The notes beneath the pieces were generated by a model, which saw only the letters and a program-made list of their open reading frames with translations, was not told the origin of the DNA and made no database searches. Below are positions 1,480 to 64,000 of a DNA stretch of 64,000 nucleotides, piece by piece. The position numbers and the translations under genes were made by a program. Source of the DNA: Macrostomum lignano (lineage: Eukaryota); the NCBI GenBank assembly GCA_002269645.1, contig NIVC01000481.1:62001-126000 (forward strand), read 5' to 3'. Numbering within the stretch: the stretch's first letter is position 1; every line of letters begins with the position of its first letter.

Positions 1480-19475
<17,996 letters not shown>

Positions 19476-28129: not shown

Positions 28130-28608
28130 TCACTGATTCCAAAGTCCTGACATACACTAATCCTAAAATCCTGACACGGATCCCAAAGTCCTGACACACA
28201 CTGATCCCAAAGTCCTGACACACTGATCCCAAAGTCCTGACACACTGATCCCAAAGTCCTGACACACACTGATCCCAGAGTCCTGACACACACTGATCCC
28301 AAAATCCTGACACGGATCCCAAAGTTCTAACACACTGATCCCAAAGTCCTGACATACACTAATCCCAAAGTCCTGACACACACTGATCCTGAAATCCTGA
28401 CACGGATCCCAAAGTTCTAACACACTGATCCCAGAGTCCTGACACGGATCCCAAAGTCCTGACATACGCTGATCCCAAAGTCCTGACATACACTGATCCC
28501 AGAGTCCTGACATACACTAATCCCAAAGTCCTGACATACACTGATCCCAAAGTCCTGACACACACTGATCCCAAAGTCCTGACACACACTAATCCCAAAG
28601 TCCTGACA
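28130..28608. repeat. 20-24-bp minisatellite (TGATCCCAAAGTCCTGACACACAC)n followed by degenerate (TGTC)n to ~28850
   Basis: Direct read. Confidence 0.92.
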
Positions 28609-29274: not shown

Positions 29275-29620
29275 CAGATCCCGAGGTCCCCAATGCGATC
29301 CCAAAGTCCCTAACCTAATCCCAAACTCCCTAATCTGATCCCGAAGTCCCTAATCTAATCTTAAAGTCCCTAATCTGATCCCAATTCCCCTAATCTGATC
29401 TCAGAAGTCCCTAATCGGATCCCAATGTCCCTAATCTGATTTCAAAAGTCCCTAATCTGATCCCAATGTCCCTAATCTGATCCCAAAAGTCCGTAATCTG
29501 ATCCTAATGTCCCTAATCTGATCCTAATGTCCCTAATCTGATTCTAATGTCCCTAATCTGATCCCAATGTCCCTAATCTAATCCCAAAGTCCCTAATCTA
29601 ATCCCAAAGTCCCTAATTGA
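29275..29620. repeat. ~20-bp minisatellite (AATCTGATCCCAAAGTCCCT)n
   Basis: About 17 units; same family as 32726-33525. Confidence 0.92.
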
Positions 29621-32270: not shown

Positions 32271-32725
32271 TTTCGTGTTCAGTAGAATTTCAAACCATGA
32301 AACACGAAAAAACATCTATCCTAATTCTATTGCCGTTTTTTAAACTCGAGTCATTGCTCCAGTTCATGCTCCAGCTTTACTATCTCTCTCTCTTTCTCTC
32401 TCTCGCTAATGATGAAGGACAGTGAAATCGCGAAGAATCGTGTCAGATTTTTTGTTCTATGATCAAAAAGTTTTTACAATTTGAGGATTTGCATTCGCGG
32501 CGACTCGCGTGCAGCGATGGGTGCTCGCACAAACTCACAGCTGTTTGGAGGAGAGAAAAGCAAGGCTTTCTTCTGTCACGCGAACCAAAAAGCGTCGGTT
32601 TTTGTTAAAATGAGCAGCTGAATAAAATCATCAAGAAAATATTGCAATAAAAGTACATTTGAAACTAAAACTACAGCTAAAAATTTTGATCGTTGTCAGA
32701 CCAGAGCTTGAAGGAAGCAAGTAAA

Positions 32726-33525
32726 TCTGATCTTAAAGTCCCTAATCTGATCCCAATATCCCTAATCTAATCCCAAAGTCCCTAATCTGATTCCAATATC
32801 CCTAATATAATCCCAAAGTCCCTAATCTAATCCCAAAGTCCATAATCTGATCCCAAAGTCCATAATCTGATCCCAAAGTCCATAATCTAATCCCAAAGTC
32901 CCTAATCTGATTCCAATATCCCTAATATAATCCCAAAGTCCCTAATCTAATCCCAAAGTCCATAATCTGATCCCAAAGTCCCTAATCTGATCCCAAAGTT
33001 CCTAATCTGATCCCAAAAGTCCCTAATTTGATCTCAAATTCCTTATCTGATCCTAAAAGTCCCTAATTTGATCCCAAATTCCTTATCTGATCCCAAATCC
33101 ATAATCTGATCTCAAATCCATAAACTGATCCCAAATCCCTAATCTGATCCCAATATCCCTAATCTGATCCCATAGTCCCTAATATGATCCCAATATCTCT
33201 AGTTTGATCCCATAGTCTCTAATCTGATCCCAAATCCCAAATCTGATCCCAAAAGTCCCTAATCTGCTTCTATATAGTGTCATCCGATCCCAAAGTCCCA
33301 AGTTGATTCCAAAAGTCCCTAATCTGCTTCTATAAAGTTCCTAATCCGATCCCAAAGTCCCAAGTTGATCCCAAAAGTCTCCAAAGTCTCCAAAGTTCCT
33401 AATTTGATCTCAAAGTCTCCAATCTGATTATAAAGTCCCTAGTTTTATCCCAAAGTCCTTAATTTGATCCCAAAGTAACAAATGTTATACCAGATCTCTA
33501 ATTTGATCCCAAAAGTCCCTAATGT
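32726..33525. repeat. ~20-bp minisatellite (AATCTGATCCCAAAGTCCCT)n
   Basis: About 40 units, decaying toward the 3' end. Confidence 0.92.
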
Positions 33526-33946
33526 GATCCCCATGTCGCCAGTTTATTCCATCGACATAGGTACAGATATGCACGAATATAATATGTAATGCTAACGTCC
33601 ATCCGACCAGAGCTTGTAGGAACCAAGTAAAACAGTTCAAAAAAGGGAAAATAACCAACAACTGCTGCGTCATGGTGGACGACGAGCCGTCTTTGCAAGC
33701 AGCTGTGTTTTCTTAGAAACCTATAACAAGCACAGAAAGACAAGAAGCAACAGTTAATTAGTATTGAAAACGCTAGGTGTAAAAAGGGTGCAGCTTGGAT
33801 TGACAAGGCCACCCTCCACCCCCCTATTAGCATTAAGCTACGTAGGAGGCTTTCAGTGAGGAGGCGTTGCCGCCTATTTCGCTAATACGAGCGTTTTTGC
33901 GGAGCGAGAGTCAGACATCCAATAAAATAATTTCTGACTTTTTCAG

Positions 33947-48098
<14,152 letters not shown>

Positions 48099-49840: not shown

Positions 49841-50614
49841 AGCAGAGGAAATATTGGACAAGAAGGAATCAGAGTTAGAAGCAGTCCCAGTCTGCTCGAA
49901 AGCATAACATATCCCGGACATCTTTAAAAAAGTATTCAACAAGAAAAACTAAAATACAGGGTATTTTTGAGCCTGCCTGTCAATCGCAAGAACAGCACGA
50001 GGGATGCCCTGCTCCACCTCCAGTCGATGAGCTTTTATCTCCGCCACGGGCAGTTTGTTGGCTCAGTTTATTGCACAAAGCTCCACTTTAACGATCTGTT
50101 AAAGTGGTTTTGTGTGAGCACTGGGGGCCGCCCCACCAGCCCTTCAGTCCGTGTTTATCCACCTGCTATCGTTGCGTTAACCCCCCCCCCCAAACAGTTC
50201 TATCGACTCGACTTTTCCCTGTTCCCCTATATATAATCCCGAACTGAGCTCAAGCCCACGAGGCATATTTGAGTAGAATAAACACACTGCAGGTCCTGAA
50301 AGGTGTGTGCATAGTGATTAACAGAAAAGCAGGTGTGCTAGTGTCTAGTCCCTGTATATTCTCGATAATTTATTATTTCAGAATTGGAATCTAATTGAAG
50401 CAGGTGCAACAGGTGCAGGACAGAATAGCTAATTCAAGTCCTGCATACAAAAGCTATTGCAGAATAAAATAATCAAAGACTGTTCAGAGCATTACAGACC
50501 AGCACCTCAAAAATAGATTTGCTGAAAGCTTAAAACAATTAATAACGAATAGAAAGTCAATCAGGGCTGATGTACACCCTTGTGAGCTCTGGATGGCTAT
50601 GGGACAATGTCGCC

Positions 50615-51881
50615 CAGGGGTGTCGCCATGAAGCCAGGAATTCTATAGATCTGCATGACTAAATTGCTAGGTTTACATGTACACTATTTTCATAATCGGT
50701 GTTTTCAGCACTCATTTTGGCGCCGCAGGCACTCATTTTGGCGCCGCAGACACTCATTTTGGCGCTGCAGGCACTCATTTTGGCGCCGCAGGCACTCATT
50801 TTGGCGCTGCAGGCACTCATTTTGGCGCCGCAGACACTCATTTTGGCGCTGCAGGCACTCATTTTGGCGCCGCAGGCACTCATTTTGGCGCTGCAGGCAC
50901 TCATTTTGGCGCCGCAGGCACTCATTTTGGCGCCGCAGGAACTTATTTTAGCGCCACAGACACTCACTTTAGCGCCGCAGACACTCATTTTAGCGCCGCA
51001 GGCACTCATTTTAGCGCCGCAGGCACTCATTTTAGCGCCGCAGGAACTTATTTTAGCGCCACAGACACTCACTTTAGCGCCGCAGACACTCATTTTAGCG
51101 CCGCAGGCACTCATTTTAGCGCCGCAGGCACTCATTTTAGCGCCACAGGCACTCATTTTAGCGCCGCAGGAACTCATTTTAGCGCCGCAGGAACTTATTT
51201 TAGCGCCACAGACACTCACTTTAGCGCCGCAGGCACTCATTTTGGCGCCACAGGCACTCATTTAGGCGCCACAGGCACTCATTTTAGCGCCGCAGGCACT
51301 CATTTTGGCGCCGCAGACACTCATTTTGGCGCCGCAGGCACTCATTTTGGCGCCGCAGGCACTCATTTTGGCGCTGCAGGCACTTATTTTGGCGCTGTAG
51401 GAACTGTAGGAACTCATTTTGGCGCCACAGGCACTCATTTTGGCGCCGTAGGCACCTATTTTGGCGCCGCAGGCACTCATTTTGGCGCCATAGACACTCA
51501 TTTTGGCGCCGCCGTAGGCACTCATTTTGGCGCCGTAGGCACCTATTTTGGCGCCGCAGGCACTCATTTTGGCGCCATAGACACTCATTTTGGCGCCGCC
51601 GTAGGCACTCATTTTGGCGCTGTAGGAACTGTAGGAACTTATTTTAGCGCCGCAGGCACTCATTTTGGCGCCACAGGCACTCATTTTGGCGCCACAGGCA
51701 CTCATTTTGGCGCCGCAGGCACTCATTTTGGCGCCACATCCACTATGTGTTTGTCCCCCTGAAGCAAAATTATTGATTTCCATAACGGGTCACAAAGATG
51801 GGATGGGGGGAACAAAGCATTGGCATGTCCCCCATAGCTTTTACTGGGGGACATGTTCTCCCCCCCGGGGTGGCTGTCGCC
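50615..51881. mobile_element. MITE-like element (hAT-type terminus CAGGGGTGTCGCCA) carrying a 21-bp array (CAGGCACTCATTTTGGCGCCG)n at ~50705-51735
   Basis: Left terminus at 50615-50628. Flanks of the array are homologous to those of the 59440-60885 array. Right end is degenerate. Confidence 0.6.
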
Positions 51882-52319
51882 AGTTAAAAACATAGTTATT
51901 GAGCTTTATTCTTCAGATCTAATGAAACTAAACTGTCACGTGTGAAAATCCGAGTTTTTCAACGAGGTTTAAGTTAATATTATAAGTTACTCGCCCACTG
52001 CTCAATCAGTACACGACAGTGCGCACACTGCATGCTTATGACTTGATTGATTGATATCAATTGAATATCTTGAATATTGACAAGGATATACAAGACTCCT
52101 TGGTAACAGGGACTTGGTTCCTATCCTAACAGCCATTGTGCAGTCGTGTCTTTTGTGCCTCGTGTCGCTGGCGGCTATTGAAATGCTAATGTCTGTGCCT
52201 AGATAAAAGTCAGTAACCATTTTTTTCTGTAAAAATGTCATCAACTATGCTGAGAAGCAGTATAGACAAGCTATTGACATTTTGAGCATTAGGAAACTGA
52301 CATGGATTGACTCTCATTC

Positions 52320-53520
52320 TCATTTCGACGCCATCGCTCTCATTTTGGCGCCATCGCTCTCATTTTGGCGCCATCGCTCTCATTTAGGGCACATCGCTTT
52401 CATTCAGGGCGCCATCGCTTTCATTTAGGGCGCCATCGCTCTCATTTAGGGCGCCATCGCTTTCATTTAGGGCGCCATCGCTTTCATTTAGGCGCCATCG
52501 CTCTCGTTTAGGGCGCCATCGCTTTTATTTTGGCGCCATCGCTTTCATTTAGGCGCCATCGCTCTCATTTTGGCGCCATCGCTCTCATTTAGGCGCCATC
52601 GCTCTCATTTAGGGCGCCATCGCTCTCATTTAGGGCGCCATCGCTTTCATTCAGGGCACATCGCTCTCATTTAGGGCGCCATCGCTCTCATTTAGGGCGC
52701 CATCGCTTTCATTTAGGGCGCCATCGCTCTCATTTAGGGCGCCATCGCTCTCATTTAGGGCGCCATCGCTCTCATTTAGGGCGCCATCGCTCTCATTTAG
52801 GGCGCCATCGCTTTCATTCAGGGCACATCGCTCTCATTTAGCGCGCCATCGCTCTCATTTTGGCGCCATCGCTCTCATTTAGGGCACATCGCTTTCATTT
52901 AGGGCGCCATCGCTCTCATTTAGGGCGCTATCGCTTTCATTCAGGGCACATCGCTCTCATTTAGGGCGCCATCGCTCTCATTTAGGGCGCCATCGCTTTC
53001 ATTTAGGGCGCCATCGCTCTCATTTAGGGTGCCATCGCTCTCATTTAGGGCGCCATCGCTTTCATTCAGGGCACATCGCTCTCATTTAGGGCGCCATCGC
53101 TCTCATTTAGGGCGCCATCGCTCTCATTTAGGGCGCCATCGCTCTCATTCAGGGCACATCGCTCTCATTTAGCGCGCCATCACTCTCATTTTGGCGCCAT
53201 CGCTCTCATTTAGGGCACATCGCTTTCATTTAGGGCGCCATCGCTCTCATTTAGGGCGCTATCGCTTTCATTCAGGGCACATCGCTCTCATTTGGGGCGC
53301 CATCGCTCTCATTTAGGACGCCATCGCTTTCATTTAGGGCGCCATCGCTCTCATTTAGGGTGCCATCGCTCTCATTTAGGGCGCCATCGCTCTCATTTAG
53401 GGCGCCATCGCTTTCATTCAGGGCACATCGCTCTCATTTAGGGCGCCATCGCTTTCATTTAGGGCGCCATCGCTTTCATTTAGGGCGCCATCGCTCTCAT
53501 TTAGGGCACCATCGCTTTTA
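52320..53520. repeat. 21-bp minisatellite (GGGCGCCATCGCTCTCATTTA)n
   Basis: About 56 units. Confidence 0.95.
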
Positions 53521-53554
53521 CTTTGACGCAATCTGTCTCTCTCTAGTTTCCTTG

Positions 53555-53705
53555 ATTTTAGCGCCGTATCTCATAGATTTTAGCGCCATATTTATAAGAT
53601 TTGAGCACCATATTTATTAGATTTTAGCGCCATATCTATTAGATTTTAGCGCCATATCTATCTGATTTTAGCGCCATATCTATCTGATTTTAGCGCCATA
53701 TCTAA
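53555..53705. repeat. 22-bp repeat (GATTTTAGCGCCATATCTATTA)n
   Basis: About 6 units. Confidence 0.88.
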
Positions 53706-58870: not shown

Positions 58871-59384
58871 AAAGACGGAAGGCTGAAGAGTGAAAGAATT
58901 CTGTCAACATCATATTGCTGCTGGATGGATGGATGGGGTGCTGGGGGGAGCTTGCTCCCAACGGACCCACCAATATCAGTCGCTCGATTGCAGCGCTCCT
59001 ACAGGCAACCAAATTTTATACACTGCAAGAGTGTGTATGTGCTCAATTCCAACTTTGGCTCTGACCCACCCCCAGCCAAACTCTCGTCTACATGCATACT
59101 TATATATAGCTATATAGCGAGCTGATAGCAATTGCGGTCATCACTTGCCACCCCCAGAGCGACACCCCCACTCATACATCTCCCCCGGAGGCACACACTG
59201 CAGATTGCAGATTGGATTCTGCGCGCCACTTCTTCATACTCTTCAATAACCCCCTCTGCTGCCGCTGCTGCTGCCTACTAGCTGCAGCTTGCGGATCTCG
59301 AGCAATGGAGACAGACAAACATCCTTCAGAATATTTTGTAGACTCTATTGAGTATGGGTCTCCACTCCTTTATAGCTATGTACA

Positions 59385-61055
59385 ATACATTATTTTCAGA
59401 ATCCGTGTTGTCAGCGCTTATTTGCATGGCAGTACAACTTTTTTGCTCAGCAGGCACTCTCTTTTGCTCAGCAGGCACTCTTTTTTGCTCAGCAGGCACT
59501 CTTTTTTGCTCAGCAGGCACTCTTTTTTGCTCAGCAGGTACTCTTTTTTGCTCAGCAGGCACTCTTTTTTGCTCAGCAGGCACTCTTTTTTGCTCAGCAG
59601 GCACTCTTTTTTGCTCAGCAGGCACTCTTTTTTGCTCAGCAGGCTCTCTTTTTTGCTCAGCAGGCACTCTTTTTTGCTCAGCAGGCACTCTTTTTTGCTC
59701 AGCAGGCTCTCTTTTTTGCTCAGCAGGCTCTCTTTTTTGCTCAGCAGGCACTCTTTTTATTGCTCAGCAGGCTCTCCTTTTTGCTCAGCAGGCTCTCTTT
59801 TTTGCTCAGCAGGCACTCTTTTTTGCTCAGCAGGCACTCTTTTTTGCTCAGCAGGCTCTCTTTTTTGCTCAGCAGGCACTCTTTTTTGCTCAGCAGGCAC
59901 TCTTTTTTGCTCAGCAGGCACTCTTTTTTGCTCAGCAGGCACTCTTTTTTGCTCAGCAGGCTCTCTTTTTTGCTCAGCAGGCACTCTTTTTTGCTCAGCA
60001 GGCACTCTTTTTTGCTCAGCAGGCACTCTTTTTTGCTCAGCAGGCTCTCTTTTTTGCTCAGCAGGCACTCTTTTTTGCTCAGCAGGCACTCTTTTTTGCT
60101 CAGCAGGCACTCTTTTTTGCTCAGCAGGCTCTCTTTTTTGCTCAGCAGGCACTCTTTTTTGCTCAGCAGGCACTCTTTTTTGCTCAGCAGGCACTCTTTT
60201 TTGCTCAGCAGGCTCTCTTTTTTGCTCAGCAGGCTCTCTTTTTTGCTCAGCAGGCACTCTTTTTTGCTCAGCAGGCTCTCTTTTTTGCTCAGCAGGCACT
60301 CTTTTTTGCTCAGCAGGCTCTCTTTTTTGCTCAGCAGGCACTCTTTTTTGCTCAGCAGGCACTCTTTTTTGCTCAGCAGGCACTCTTTTTTGCTCAGCAG
60401 GCTCTCTTTTTTGCTCAGCAGACACTCTTTTTTGCTCAGCAGGCACTCTTTATTGCTCAGCAGGCTCTCTTTTTTGCTCAGCAGGCACTCTTTTTTGCTC
60501 AGCAGGCTCTCTTTTTTGCTCAGCAGGCACTCTTTTTTGCTCAGCAGGCTCTCTTTTTATTGCTCAGCAGGCTCTCTTTTTTGCTCAGCAGGCACTCTTT
60601 TTGCTCAGCAGGCACTCTTTTTATTGCTCAGCAGGCTCTCTTTTTTGCTCAGCAGGCACTCTTTTTTGCTCAGCAGGCTCTCTTTTTTGCTCAGCAGGCA
60701 CTCTTTTTTGCTCAGCAGGCACTCTTTTTATTGCTCAGCAGGCTCTCTTTTTTGCTCAGCAGGCTCTCTTTTTTGCTCAGCAGGCACTCTTTTTTGCTCA
60801 GCAGGCACTCTTTTTTGCTCAGCAGGCACTCTTTTTTGCTCAGCAGGCACTCTTTTTTGCTCAGCAGGTACTCTTTTTGGCGCCGTACAGGCATTTATTT
60901 TGACGCCGCAGACACTCATCTTAGCGCGGCCTGCAAGCTATATTTTTGTCGTCCTGAAGCGAAATTGTTGATTTACATAACGGTTCACCTTTAAGGTTGG
61001 GTGGAGGGACAAAGCATTGGCATGCCCCCCCGTCCCCCAGGTGGCGACGCCCCTG
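59385..61055. mobile_element. Second copy of the 21-bp-array MITE family; array (CAGGCACTCTTTTTTGCTCAG)n at 59440-60885; right terminus TGGCGACGCCCCTG at 61042-61055
   Basis: Right terminus is the reverse complement of the 50615 left terminus at 13/14 positions. Shared right flank CCTGAAGC.AAATT.TTGATTT.CATAACGG.TCAC...ACAAAGCATTGGCATG.CCCC and shared left flank ATGTACA...TATTTT.CA.AATC.GTGTT.TCAGC.CT.ATTT. Confidence 0.65.
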
Positions 61056-64000
61056 TCACACAGTGTAAGCAATTGCAATTGTTATACTCCTAATATAGTA
61101 ATAGAAGTAGCTATAGCAATTTTTATTATTATTATTCGATAAACGTAAACGATTCGATGCACATGGTATACGAAGGGTAAGGCCACGACGTTAAATAGCA
61201 AAAGTTAAAAGAATGACGCCCCTTAATTGACGGCCATTGGTGCTGGCGCCAGCTAAATAAATTGGTGCCTCAATACTGCTGTACATACATGTATGGCAGT
61301 ACATTTGTAAAACGAAAAAATCACCCGAAATTCGTATAGCTGACTGCATGTGTAACAATACATGCATATATGTAATGTGCAAGGCTATAAAGAAGGGATG
61401 AAAAAAAGAGATGCATGTAAAAACCATCAATATGCAATCTCGCAAATTTTGTCAGCGAGAAAGCTCTGTGAATATCAATTAGAGCTATATAAGAAAGGCA
61501 CGTGAACAACATATCAAAAAGATCCACATTCTGAGTCTGCATCCAATCGAAAGCAATATAACAGTTTTTGTGCTGACAAAATGGAAAATTCCTATCTCCG
61601 TAATGTATTGTTTTGAAAACCTGCCTATAAATTTTCCAAGAAACGTAGTTTTTCGTCCATCTGTTTGAGTAGTCCTTTGGCATTGTAGAATACGTATAGT
61701 ATACATATATTGTGTACTACAGCTTGTACAGTGTGGTAGGTGGAAGATTTTTCTTCGGGATAATATACTACCACAGATTGCTAGACGACTTTAATGCTAA
61801 TTAAAAATCTTAAAAGTATCTAGCGTTCCTGTTCACTTTATCGAAATACGACGAATGCTAAGAGTAGCGCAGATTATCGAACAAACGAAACAAAAGAGCA
61901 AATTTATTTATTAAAAAACAGCTGTTTATTATTTAAATACTTTATAGAAAATACGCCTTAATGCAAAAAAAATTAAAACCATCTGTCAGCCTAAACATTT
62001 TGTTTTACTTTATAAAATTTAAAATACGTATACATTTATTTGCCCAAACGCTTCCCACCAATTCAATTTAGTTTTCTACGTTACCGTTGTTCCTCAGTAT
62101 GTAGTTGTGCTGCGCTGCGCTCTAGGGTCAATAATTTCGGTGCATATTGTTGCCTGTAGTTATGCAGCGTAATGAAAATATTTGTTATCTACAAATGTAA
62201 ACATTACATTTGACATTGTTTGCTTAAGCATAACTGTAATTTATGTCTTTTATCTGTTCGAGAAACATCCGATTTTACAAGCACAAATTGCGGCGGATGA
62301 TGTAAGTGTTCGTCATCTATCTTGTATGAATTAAAAAATATGTAACTCTGTAATATTTAGTTTTCTAATTTAAATGGAGTTAACTTTATTAAGAAAAAAA
62401 TTTACTACCACAAAAATTTCTAACTCAGAGTCAGTCTGCTAACCTTAAGCTTGTATATAGATTAGGCCTATAGCTTTAAAACATACATAATATTTTTAAT
62501 TTTAGTTAGGCCATGGCCAGTCCAGGAAAATCGAAATGATATATAAGTCCAATTGCCATTCTTTTTAATTAACTTTTCTAGTAGCTTTAATTTTGTAACT
62601 AATTTTTTAACAAAAAATGTATTAGGCCCTACAATCATTTCCTATGATTATGCGTAGGCCAGGGAAAAACTAGAACTTATCACAATATACTAAATCTCTA
62701 AGGTTTGTCTGTCCTTAAATCCTACAGAGTAAGCCTACTTTAAGTTTTAAAAGGTATTTTTTAAAATTTTTTATAATTCATATTTATAATAACATGATTG
62801 TCATAAATAAAAAACTACTATACAAATATAAAAAACAGGAAATTTTTGTTATATATTATGTGTAATATAAACTATATTCCATACCTAGCTCACAATATAT
62901 ATTATATTAGAAAATTCTGGTGCACATAACTTCATAAGCAAAAAATATACAAAAAGCGGTATACATACCACACCCAAGAAGGTTACATGTAAGCTGGAAT
63001 TTTCCAGTGTACCATTGAAAAGTTTGGCTATTTTGGCGTACCACTTTGGCGTACCACTTTGAGCTTGAGAAATTTTTGGCATACTAATTTTGGTGAATAT
63101 ATTCAATTATTCATGCCATATATAAAAATTGTAATATAAATTAACCCTTTTTAGTTTTTACATAAAATGAAGGAAAATTTGTATAGTCTAGAAAATCAGT
63201 AATAAACTTTTTGCTTTTTAAAAATTAACAATGAATAAAACTTGTGTAAATTATTGCTAAGAATGTAAATTTTGTATTCTTTTTTGTAGGTTAAATTTAA
63301 GTTTGTTTAAGATGAAAATATTTGTAATTTGAAAAAATTTTTTGTACAAAAGCCTTTCTTAGAAAACTCTACTCGTGAAAACTGAATGACCTTTTTAGGA
63401 GGAATTTTTGGTGTACATTTTAGGGAATTTTTTGTTTTTAGCATACACTGGTGTACATTTAGCTGAGATAAGATTCTTGTTCTGGCGTATACTACATGAT
63501 CCAAACCGTGGTTTACATGGCATATAATATATCAAAATCCCAGTATAAGACCAAGACTGCCACACACCAAGACTGCCACACTTGGAGGAGCTAAGGAGAG
63601 GAATTAGACTCAATGTATTATTGGATAATGGTATGGACTAAGAAAAGATAAAAAAGAAAGTAGGAAAAACTAGCAAAACAAGGCTATCACTATGAGCTAT
63701 AGATAAAAAGATGGCCTTTTTCATAAAAAAAATTTGCACTAAAAACGGTTGGACATATGCTGCACTAGCATATTCTGGCATAAGGGAGAAAAATCTAGTG
63801 TAGTACAGCGTAAGACAAAAAATAATTAGCACAATTTGGTAGTGTGACAGGCCTTTTGGCTCTGTCTTTCTAAACTTCTAACTATTAGTGTTTATTAAAT
63901 ATCCTACGAGCTGCCACCAAAGTTGTTACAGGCCTTTCACCTCTTACTTTATCAATTTTAATCCCACCGATTTGCCAACTACAGTTATCCTGATTATACT

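What the first reader, a model, noticed from the sequence alone, without database searches (positions are those of the whole stretch)
50705..51735. About 30 tandem E2F-consensus sites carried inside a transposon-like element
Seen: roughly 30 TTTGGCGC octamers (counted by eye, mostly TTTTGGCGCC) at 21-bp spacing, about two helical turns, plus a central block of TTTAGCGC variants. Established: TTTSSCGC is the E2F/DP consensus, TTTGGCGCC is a preferred E2F1-3 core, and MITE-borne E2F minisatellites are reported in Brassicaceae. Inference: an animal parallel in which mobile arrays could titrate E2F/DREAM complexes or give nearby genes or the element itself proliferation-coupled regulation. This would be notable if the host is a neoblast-based flatworm.
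Basis: partly seen in the sequence, partly recalled or inferred. Interest (0 to 1): 0.7.

Follow-up and report, generated by a model that had tools for sequence, protein, structure and literature searches.

The report
Flatworm transposon-family minisatellite with E2F-like motif
A 1-kb run of 48 copies of a 21-base unit in the flatworm Macrostomum lignano does carry 31 perfect matches to the E2F binding consensus, but it looks like an ordinary fast-changing minisatellite: it belongs to an old transposon-linked repeat family whose other copies have largely lost the motif, and nothing shows it is kept for E2F binding.

Summary
Window 50708-51738 is 48 units of GCACTCATTTTGGCGCCGCAG. It has 31 TTTGGCGC, 24 of them TTTTGGCGCC, and a central block of 16 TTTAGCGC.

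The host is Macrostomum lignano. The window is 100% identical to NIVC01000481.1. 45% of it is tandem arrays.

The array belongs to a dispersed family:
- Array B (59438-60878) shares both inner arms with A.
- A third copy, C3, lies in an ALAD intron on another contig. It has a perfect 16-bp terminal inverted repeat and an 8-bp target-site duplication, so it is a true non-autonomous DNA transposon.
- A and B have no recognisable ends.

The arrays grow by block duplication and change length between near-identical gene duplicates. The E2F octamer is not maintained. Intact units are 31/48 (A), 6/57 (D), 0/7 (E), about 1/71 (B), and 10/23, 9/19, 6/17 (C3 in three paralogs). The single most variable base is the G/A that switches the consensus on and off.

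No copy lies near a cell-cycle gene. E2F binding was not testable here.

Verdict: a new member of a known kind, a tandem-repeat-containing MITE-like family. The E2F match is most likely incidental. Low interest.

The parts
50644..50707 (+). Left inner arm of copy A. The part 50661-50707 is shared with C3.
   Evidence: 72-73% identical to B 59353-59413. About 67% identical to C3 L002 10599-10649.
50708..51738 (+). Array A: 48 units of the 21-bp minisatellite GCACTCATTTTGGCGCCGCAG. It has 31 E2F-consensus octamers and 16 TTTAGCGC units, with higher-order blocks of 84, 105 and 87 bp.
51739..51833 (+). Right arm of copy A. The first ~32 bp are shared with B and C3. The rest is shared with B only.
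   Evidence: 81% identical to B 60938-61030. 66% identical to C3 over the first ~35 bp.
51824..51855 (+). Perfect 11-bp hairpin (CATGTCCCCCA / TGGGGGACATG, 10-nt loop) at the point where A/B homology ends.
   Evidence: Its function is unknown. It is absent from B.
52318..53516 (+). Array D: related 20/21-bp units YTCATTTAGGGCGCCATCGCT. 6 of 57 units keep CTCATTTTGGCGCC.
53554..53704 (+). Array E: related 22-bp units GATTTTAGCGCCATATCTATYW. None has an intact octamer.
59353..59437 (+). Left inner arm of copy B.
59438..60866 (+). Array B: about 68 units of the derived 21-bp unit GCAGGCACTCTTTTTTGCTCA. It matches the A unit at 17 of 21 positions and has no E2F octamer.
60867..60931 (+). Three ancestral-type units at the 3' end of array B (TTTGGCGCC, TTTGACGCC, CTTAGCGCG).
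60938..61030 (+). Right arm of copy B.
8383..8762 (+). 32-bp-unit array TGTGTTTTTGGCGCCTCTGAGTGACACACCTG. It shares only the 10-mer TTTTGGCGCC with A, so kinship is uncertain. It starts about 20 bp after a 5' splice site.

Best explanation
Array A is the internal minisatellite of an old, non-coding, transposon-linked repeat family of Macrostomum lignano. The family module is a ~50-bp left arm, a 21-bp tandem array and a ~35-bp right arm.

In at least one lineage (C3) this module sits between 16-bp terminal inverted repeats and is flanked by an 8-bp target-site duplication. That copy was therefore moved by a cut-and-paste transposase supplied in trans, as with a MITE of the hAT/P type.

After insertion, each array grows, shrinks and is reshuffled by replication slippage or unequal exchange. 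Variant units drift to high frequency or replace the original.

The match to the E2F consensus is a property of the founder unit, copied passively. It is not maintained by selection.

Shown here: array structure, family relationship, TIR and TSD of C3, and length and composition turnover. Inferred: the transposase class, the slippage mechanism, and neutrality.
For: (1) Host and background. The window is M. lignano. 45% of it is tandem repeats in about 41 arrays. Simple and tandem repeats make up 15% of this genome (PMC5730564).

(2) Family. A and B share both arms. C3 on another contig shares the inner arms and the same unit consensus.

(3) Mobility. C3 has the perfect TIR CATAGGCGTAGGAACG and the 8-bp TSD GATGTTGG. 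An unbiased scan recovers it as the only perfect candidate.

(4) Array dynamics. A contains higher-order blocks. A has 48 units in the window and 50 in the 99.5-99.9% identical duplicate locus. C3 has 23, 19 and 17 units with different G/A orders in three ALAD paralogs whose arms are 96-99% identical.

(5) No maintenance of the octamer. Intact fractions are 65%, 11%, 0% and ~1% in A, D, E and B, and 35-47% in C3. The most variable site is the G/A inside the octamer.

(6) No coding capacity and no RNA family.
Against: A and B have no recognisable TIR or TSD, so their own mobility is only inferred from shared arms. Only three independent loci were seen, and genome-wide copy number is unknown. 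Within A, TT and GCGC of the core are invariant in all 48 units. Fewer sites vary inside the octamer (2 of 8) than outside (10 of 13; Fisher p = 0.03). The core ATTTTRGCGCC is also the part shared with the diverged arrays D and E. Some constraint or amplification bias on the core is therefore possible. The TIR of C3 begins CATAG, which does not fit the hAT YARNG end.
Confidence: 0.75

Rival explanations
1. The arrays are functional E2F/DP (DREAM) binding platforms. They would titrate E2F in proliferating neoblasts or germ cells, or confer proliferation-coupled regulation on nearby genes or on the element.
For: There are 31 perfect TTTGGCGC sites, 24 of them TTTTGGCGCC, which from my own knowledge is half of the palindromic SELEX optimum for E2F1-4. 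The spacing is 21 bp. In Brassicaceae about 85% of E2F motifs lie in TEs, mostly MITEs. They bind E2Fa and may dilute the factor. TT and GCGC of the core are invariant in A. C3 lies about 0.5-1.3 kb from the annotated start of ALAD.
Against: The octamer is not conserved. B, D and E have lost it in 89-100% of units. In C3 it varies from 6 to 10 sites among paralogs. The commonest variant (TTTAGCGC) breaks the S at position 4 of the consensus and is the most frequent polymorphism in every array. The neighbouring genes are a cadherin (A lies 2.6 kb past its stop codon) and ALAD, not cell-cycle genes. Almost any 21-mer matches some transcription-factor consensus. By a rough estimate, a genome with about 115 Mb of tandem repeats should hold hundreds of arrays carrying TTTSSCGC by chance (inference). 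A non-autonomous element has no transposase gene for E2F to drive.
Confidence: 0.06
2. The conserved core ATTTTRGCGCC, with its GGCGCC palindrome, persists for a mechanistic reason that has nothing to do with E2F. One option is that it is a binding site for the family's transposase or a host protein, like the subterminal repeats of hAT and P elements. The other is that the palindrome itself promotes slippage, so units that keep it are the ones that get copied.
For: GCGC is invariant in all 48 units of A, while the neighbouring CpG at unit positions 17-18 varies in 15-25% of units. The core is the only part shared with D, E and perhaps the 8383 array. In the clam MITE DTC84, a palindrome in each core repeat was proposed as the hotspot for array length change (PMC3879986).
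Against: Four units folded as single-stranded DNA are no more stable than shuffles (z = 0.03). Array B expanded to about 68 units after losing the palindrome. The motif does not occur in the arms of C3 outside the array. Counts of variable sites are confounded by block duplication, so there are few independent events.
Confidence: 0.12
3. A, D, E and B are not transposon copies. They would be pieces of one old local tandem or segmental duplication, later broken up and diverged. The C3 element would have merely captured the same minisatellite.
For: A, D, E and B all lie within 10 kb on the same strand. A and B have no TIR or TSD. D and E share no arms with A.
Against: Homology between A and B is confined to sharply bounded arms plus the array, with unrelated DNA beyond. 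The same arm-array-arm module occurs on a different contig inside a TIR/TSD-bounded element.
Confidence: 0.1

Closest known systems
Tandem-repeat-containing MITEs: DTC84 and pearl-type elements of bivalves, Tetris of Drosophila virilis, DINE-TR1
   Same: These are short non-coding elements built as flank, internal tandem array, flank. Array copy number differs in every copy. There is a palindrome in each unit. The arrays can expand into satellite-like blocks (PMC3879986; PMC4079207).
   Different: The unit here is 21 bp, not about 150 bp. C3 has an 8-bp TSD and a 16-bp TIR, not the AA target site of the pearl/DTC84 type. There is no sequence similarity. The host is a flatworm.
E2F-motif-bearing MITEs of Brassicaceae (Henaff et al. 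2014)
   Same: A non-autonomous DNA transposon family carries the E2F consensus, and most E2F-consensus octamers in the sampled DNA lie inside the repeats.
   Different: In the plants, binding by E2Fa was shown and genome-wide enrichment was measured. Here neither could be tested. The motif sits in a decaying minisatellite, and the sampling was biased towards loci that hold the arrays.
hAT and P superfamily non-autonomous elements
   Same: 8-bp target-site duplication, short perfect TIR, and small size: 839 bp including 495 bp of array.
   Different: The TIR begins CATAG, which does not meet the hAT YARNG rule. No autonomous partner or transposase was found, so the superfamily is unassigned.
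Ordinary hypervariable minisatellites
   Same: 10-60-bp units, higher-order blocks, length differences between near-identical alleles or duplicates, and interspersed variant units.
   Different: This one is embedded in a dispersed module with conserved arms.

Membership tests
MITE / non-autonomous class II transposon | Terminal inverted repeats | tested here: inconclusive
   C3 has a perfect 16-bp TIR. A and B have none within 600 bp, nor in wider scans.
MITE / non-autonomous class II transposon | Target-site duplication flanking the TIRs | tested here: inconclusive
   C3 has a perfect 8-bp GATGTTGG on both sides in all three ALAD paralogs. None was found for A or B. No empty site was available.
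MITE / non-autonomous class II transposon | Small size and no coding capacity | tested here: met
   C3 is 839 bp. The only ORFs are read-through of the repeat, with no Pfam hit above cut-off.
MITE / non-autonomous class II transposon | Many dispersed copies in the genome | not testable with these tools
   Three independent loci (A, B, C3) were seen in about 150 kb of non-redundant M. lignano DNA. No whole-genome search was possible. A metagenome scan gave 0 hits.
hAT superfamily | 8-bp TSD | tested here: met
   C3. The P superfamily and a few others share this feature.
hAT superfamily | TIR ends with 5'-YARNG | tested here: not met
   The C3 TIR starts CATAG, so position 3 is T, not R.
hAT superfamily | Related autonomous element with a hAT transposase and matching TIRs | not tested
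Functional E2F/DP binding sites | Match to TTTSSCGC | tested here: met
   31 of 48 units in A.
Functional E2F/DP binding sites | Bound by E2F/DP in vitro or in vivo | not testable with these tools
   No binding data exist. No paper links M. lignano to E2F sites.
Functional E2F/DP binding sites | Motif conserved among related copies and orthologous or paralogous loci | tested here: not met
   Intact units are 31/48, 6/57, 0/7 and ~1/71 in A, D, E and B, and 10/23, 9/19 and 6/17 in paralogous C3 arrays.
Functional E2F/DP binding sites | Located at promoters of cell-cycle or DNA-replication genes | tested here: not met
   A is 2.6 kb downstream of a cadherin stop codon, with no gene called in the remaining ~6.4 kb of the annotated locus past the array (to window ~58.1 kb). 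C3 is in an intron of ALAD.
Brassicaceae-type E2F-MITE amplification | Genome-wide over-representation of the motif in the MITE fraction | not testable with these tools
   Only biased samples were available. 47 of 49 octamers in the window and 10 of 11 in L002 lie in the arrays.

The most novel reading that the evidence does not exclude
An animal counterpart of the Brassicaceae case. A transposon family would have spread arrays of high-affinity E2F sites through the genome of a stem-cell-rich flatworm. These arrays would be occupied by E2F/DP in neoblasts or germ cells, acting as a sink or as proliferation-linked enhancers. G/A unit turnover would tune the site number at each locus.
Probability: 0.05. 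Interest if true: 0.65.

Novelty: new member of a known kind. Interest (0 to 1): 0.2.

Why it matters
If the E2F reading were true, it would be the first animal example of transposon-borne E2F site arrays. It would sit in a model where stem-cell proliferation and transgenesis can both be studied, so it would be directly testable.

As the evidence stands, the value is modest. It documents an undescribed tandem-repeat-containing transposon family in M. lignano. It shows how fast its arrays turn over between the duplicated chromosome copies. It also warns that consensus matches inside minisatellites of this repeat-rich genome are expected by chance, and that such arrays contaminate gene models.

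Tried and rejected
- Whole-window repeat finder: swamped by microsatellites. I replaced it with TRF masking plus self-BLAST.
- Protein search with the ORF that runs through the array, to find other copies: one hit, a mis-annotated ALAD model. That hit led to C3. A look-up of that model's contig failed, so I went through the NCBI ALAD paralogs instead.
- Search of 1.8 billion representative proteins with the same ORF: only unrelated low-complexity repeat proteins.
- Metagenome scan for a two-unit pattern: 0 hits.
- TIR/TSD scans for A and B, narrow and wide, including a composite element spanning A-D-E: nothing credible. A CAGGGGYGTCGCCA-like motif on both sides of A and B looked like a hAT-type end. 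It lies in direct orientation and is partly palindromic, so I did not use it.
- tRNA/SINE head and Rfam: nothing.
- A Helitron-like 3' end (hairpin plus CTRR): the hairpin exists in A only and there is no CTRR. Rejected.
- Single-strand structure of the units: not different from shuffles.
- Coding repeat protein: no family above cut-off.
- Looked for an empty site in the duplicate cadherin locus and in the ALAD paralogs: all copies are occupied.
- The Wasik 2015 genome paper is not held in the library.

Full report
**What is there**

Window 50708-51738 is a tandem array with period 21 and consensus GCACTCATTTTGGCGCCGCAG. Splitting it unit by unit gives 48 units. All are spaced 21 bp apart, except two 24-bp and two 30-bp steps caused by small internal duplications.

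TTTGGCGC occurs 31 times in the array, 24 of them as TTTTGGCGCC. TTTAGCGC occurs 16 times, mainly in units 12-25. In the whole window TTTSSCGC occurs 49 times, against 3.7 +/- 1.6 in shuffles. 47 of these lie in four tandem arrays and only 2 in unique DNA. The excess, however, follows automatically from copying one unit in tandem.

**Host and background**

The 715-aa cadherin ORF at 33947-36094 is 99% identical to Macrostomum lignano BOX15_Mlig009452g1. Its paralog's locus, L005 (NIVC01000481.1, assembly GCA_002269645.1), is 100% identical to the window. The window therefore corresponds to about 62001-126000 of that contig. L001 (NIVC01000124.1) is a second copy of the locus, 97-99.9% identical.

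TRF masks 45% of the window, in about 41 arrays of 100 bp or more, separated by unique spacers of 0.3-1.4 kb. The genome paper reports that simple and tandem repeats make up 15% of this genome (PMC5730564). Minisatellites are thus the normal background here, not an exception.

**Family relations**

After masking the arrays, the only self-similarity that involves the finding joins the flanks of array A to the flanks of array B (59438-60878):
- Left arm: A 50644-50707 against B 59353-59413, 72% identical.
- Right arm: A 51743-51833 against B 60938-61030, 81% identical.

The main unit of B (GCAGGCACTCTTTTTTGCTCA) matches the A unit at 17 of 21 positions and has no E2F octamer. B ends with three ancestral-type units (TTTGGCGCC, TTTGACGCC, CTTAGCGCG) next to the shared right arm.

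Just downstream of A lie two more related arrays on the same strand:
- D (52318-53516) has units YTCATTTAGGGCGCCATCGCT, with 6 of 57 units still CTCATTTTGGCGCC.
- E (53554-53704) has units GATTTTAGCGCCATATCTATYW.

A 32-bp-unit array at 8383-8762 shares only the 10-mer TTTTGGCGCC. For A against 40 other arrays, a shared 10-mer has a chance probability of roughly 0.04 (my estimate). Kinship of that array with A is therefore uncertain.

**A copy with transposon ends**

A protein search with the ORF that reads through the array found one M. lignano gene model, an ALAD protein. It translates part of such an array as an exon. The NCBI ALAD paralogs led to three loci, L002, L003 and L004.

In each, an intron in the 5' part of the gene holds copy C3. 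It has the same 21-bp unit consensus, with 23, 19 and 17 units, and inner arms homologous to those of A and B.

In L002 the element spans 10495-11333 (839 bp). It begins and ends with the perfect 16-bp inverted repeat CATAGGCGTAGGAACG and is flanked by the perfect 8-bp direct repeat GATGTTGG. A blind scan for TIR plus TSD recovers exactly this pair as the only perfect candidate.

This is the signature of a cut-and-paste DNA transposon without coding capacity. An 8-bp duplication fits hAT or P elements. The end CATAG does not meet the hAT YARNG rule, so I leave the superfamily open.

The same scans find no ends for A or B, and the C3 TIR is absent from the window. What all three copies share is the module of left inner arm (~50 bp), array and right inner arm (~35 bp). 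The arms are only 65-72% identical, so the family is old. A and B are either a different subtype or decayed copies.

**How the arrays behave**

Array A contains higher-order blocks. Units 2-5 are repeated as units 6-9 (84 bp). A 105-bp block of TTTAGCGC-type units recurs about three times. Units 35-38 are repeated as units 39-42 (87 bp).

Between the window and L001 the flanks are 99.5-99.9% identical. The unit strings are identical except for two extra units in L001, giving 50 against 48.

The three C3 arrays lie between arms that are 96-99% identical, yet they differ in length and in the order of G-type and A-type units. Writing x for a unit that is neither type:
- L002: xGGGGaaGaxGGaaaaaGaaGaxG
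- L003: xGaGaaGGaaaaaGGGGaxG
- L004: xGGaaaxGGaaaaaGaxG

This is standard minisatellite turnover by slippage or unequal exchange. It runs faster than point substitution.

**Is the E2F octamer maintained?**

Units with an intact TTTSSCGC, by array:

| Array | Intact units |
|---|---|
| A (window) | 31/48 |
| A (L001) | 33/50 |
| D | 6/57 |
| E | 0/7 |
| B | about 1/71 |
| C3 (L002) | 10/23 |
| C3 (L003) | 9/19 |
| C3 (L004) | 6/17 |

In every array of the A/C3 type, the most variable position of the unit is the first G of GGCGC. It is G or A, with a minor-allele share of 33-47%. That is the base that turns the consensus on or off.

One observation points the other way. TT and GCGC are invariant in all 48 units of A, and fewer positions vary inside the octamer (2 of 8) than outside (10 of 13; Fisher p = 0.03). 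The core ATTTTRGCGCC is also what A shares with D and E. Block duplication means there were very few independent events, so this is weak evidence. If it reflects a real bias, the pattern (a conserved GCGC palindrome core and a free position 4) fits a mechanistic or other protein-binding reason at least as well as E2F.

Four units folded as single-stranded DNA are not unusually stable. Array B also expanded after losing the palindrome, so that alternative is not established either.

**Context**

The cadherin coding region ends at window 48098. A starts 2.6 kb downstream. No gene is called in the remaining ~6.4 kb of the annotated locus past the array (to window ~58.1 kb). C3 lies in an intron of a haem-synthesis gene. 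Neither position is a cell-cycle promoter. The ORFs through the arrays have no Pfam family above cut-off. No Rfam family or tRNA is present.

**Comparison with what is known**

- Tandem-repeat-containing MITEs are well described. Examples are DTC84 and pearl-type elements in bivalves, including the idea that a palindrome in each unit drives length change, and Tetris in Drosophila virilis (PMC3879986, PMC4079207).
In Brassicaceae about 85% of E2F motifs lie in TEs, mostly MITEs of the hAT, PIF and MULE types, plus Helitrons. They bind E2Fa, mostly lie far from genes, and may dilute the factor.
- I found no paper on E2F sites or on this family in Macrostomum.
- From my own knowledge, TTTTGGCGCC is half of the palindromic SELEX optimum of E2F1-4, so binding in vitro is plausible. 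Whether the arrays are occupied in vivo cannot be judged from sequence.
- Nearly any 21-mer matches some transcription-factor consensus. A genome with roughly 115 Mb of tandem repeats should hold hundreds of arrays that carry TTTSSCGC by chance (rough inference).

**Verdict**

The feature is real. It is a new member of a known kind: a minisatellite inside an old transposon-linked module of M. lignano. The E2F interpretation is not supported by conservation or by context, but binding data have not excluded it. I put about 5% on a functional E2F role. Interest is low (0.2).

Noticed in passing
window 40898-42129; L001 16972-30954: The 33-bp array TTGTGTCTTGCTGACTGTATGTGTCTCTTTCAT has 36 copies (87% matches) in the window. 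In the duplicate locus it has 423 copies (14 kb, 99% matches). This is either a very recent massive expansion or an assembly artefact.
   Followed up: partly
window 1-64000: 45% of the window is tandem repeats. About 41 arrays of 100 bp or more, mostly with unrelated units, alternate with 0.3-1.4-kb unique spacers inside and between three genes (PLC-like, LRR, cadherin). That is three times the genome average of 15%.
   Followed up: partly
L002 10400-11160 (ALAD intron); protein P0121: The UniRef ALAD gene model (A0A1I8GI...) translates part of the intronic minisatellite as an exon (STHFGAAGAHFGAAG...) and skips about 100 residues of the enzyme core. This is a likely annotation artefact caused by the open reading frame of the repeat.
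   Followed up: partly
window 50545-50626; L002 11476-11522: A 35-bp motif ACGAWTAGAAAGTCAGGGCNGNTGTACACCC, followed by GGGGTGTC, lies just left of copy A and about 140 bp right of copy C3. It may be a second small repeat that travels with or next to the family.
   Followed up: partly
window 50613-50628, 51866-51883, 59146-59172, 61040-61062: GC-rich, partly palindromic motifs of the type CAGGGGYGTCGCCA / GGTGGCGACGCC occur on both sides of A and of B, in direct rather than inverted orientation. No explanation was found.
   Followed up: partly
window 8360-8400: The 32-bp-unit array with TTTTTGGCGCC starts about 20 bp after a 5' splice site (GGAG|GTAAAA) of the PLC-like gene.
   Followed up: no
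window 28131-28608, 29277-29617, 32724-33531: Three separate arrays share CCCAAAGTCC-containing 20-24-bp units. This is a second family of related minisatellites, lying between the LRR gene and the start of the cadherin gene.
   Followed up: no
window 15015-15324 and 39624-40256: (ACAG)n and its complement (TGTC)n form 310-bp inverted-repeat arms 24.5 kb apart. This is probably a coincidence of microsatellites.
   Followed up: no
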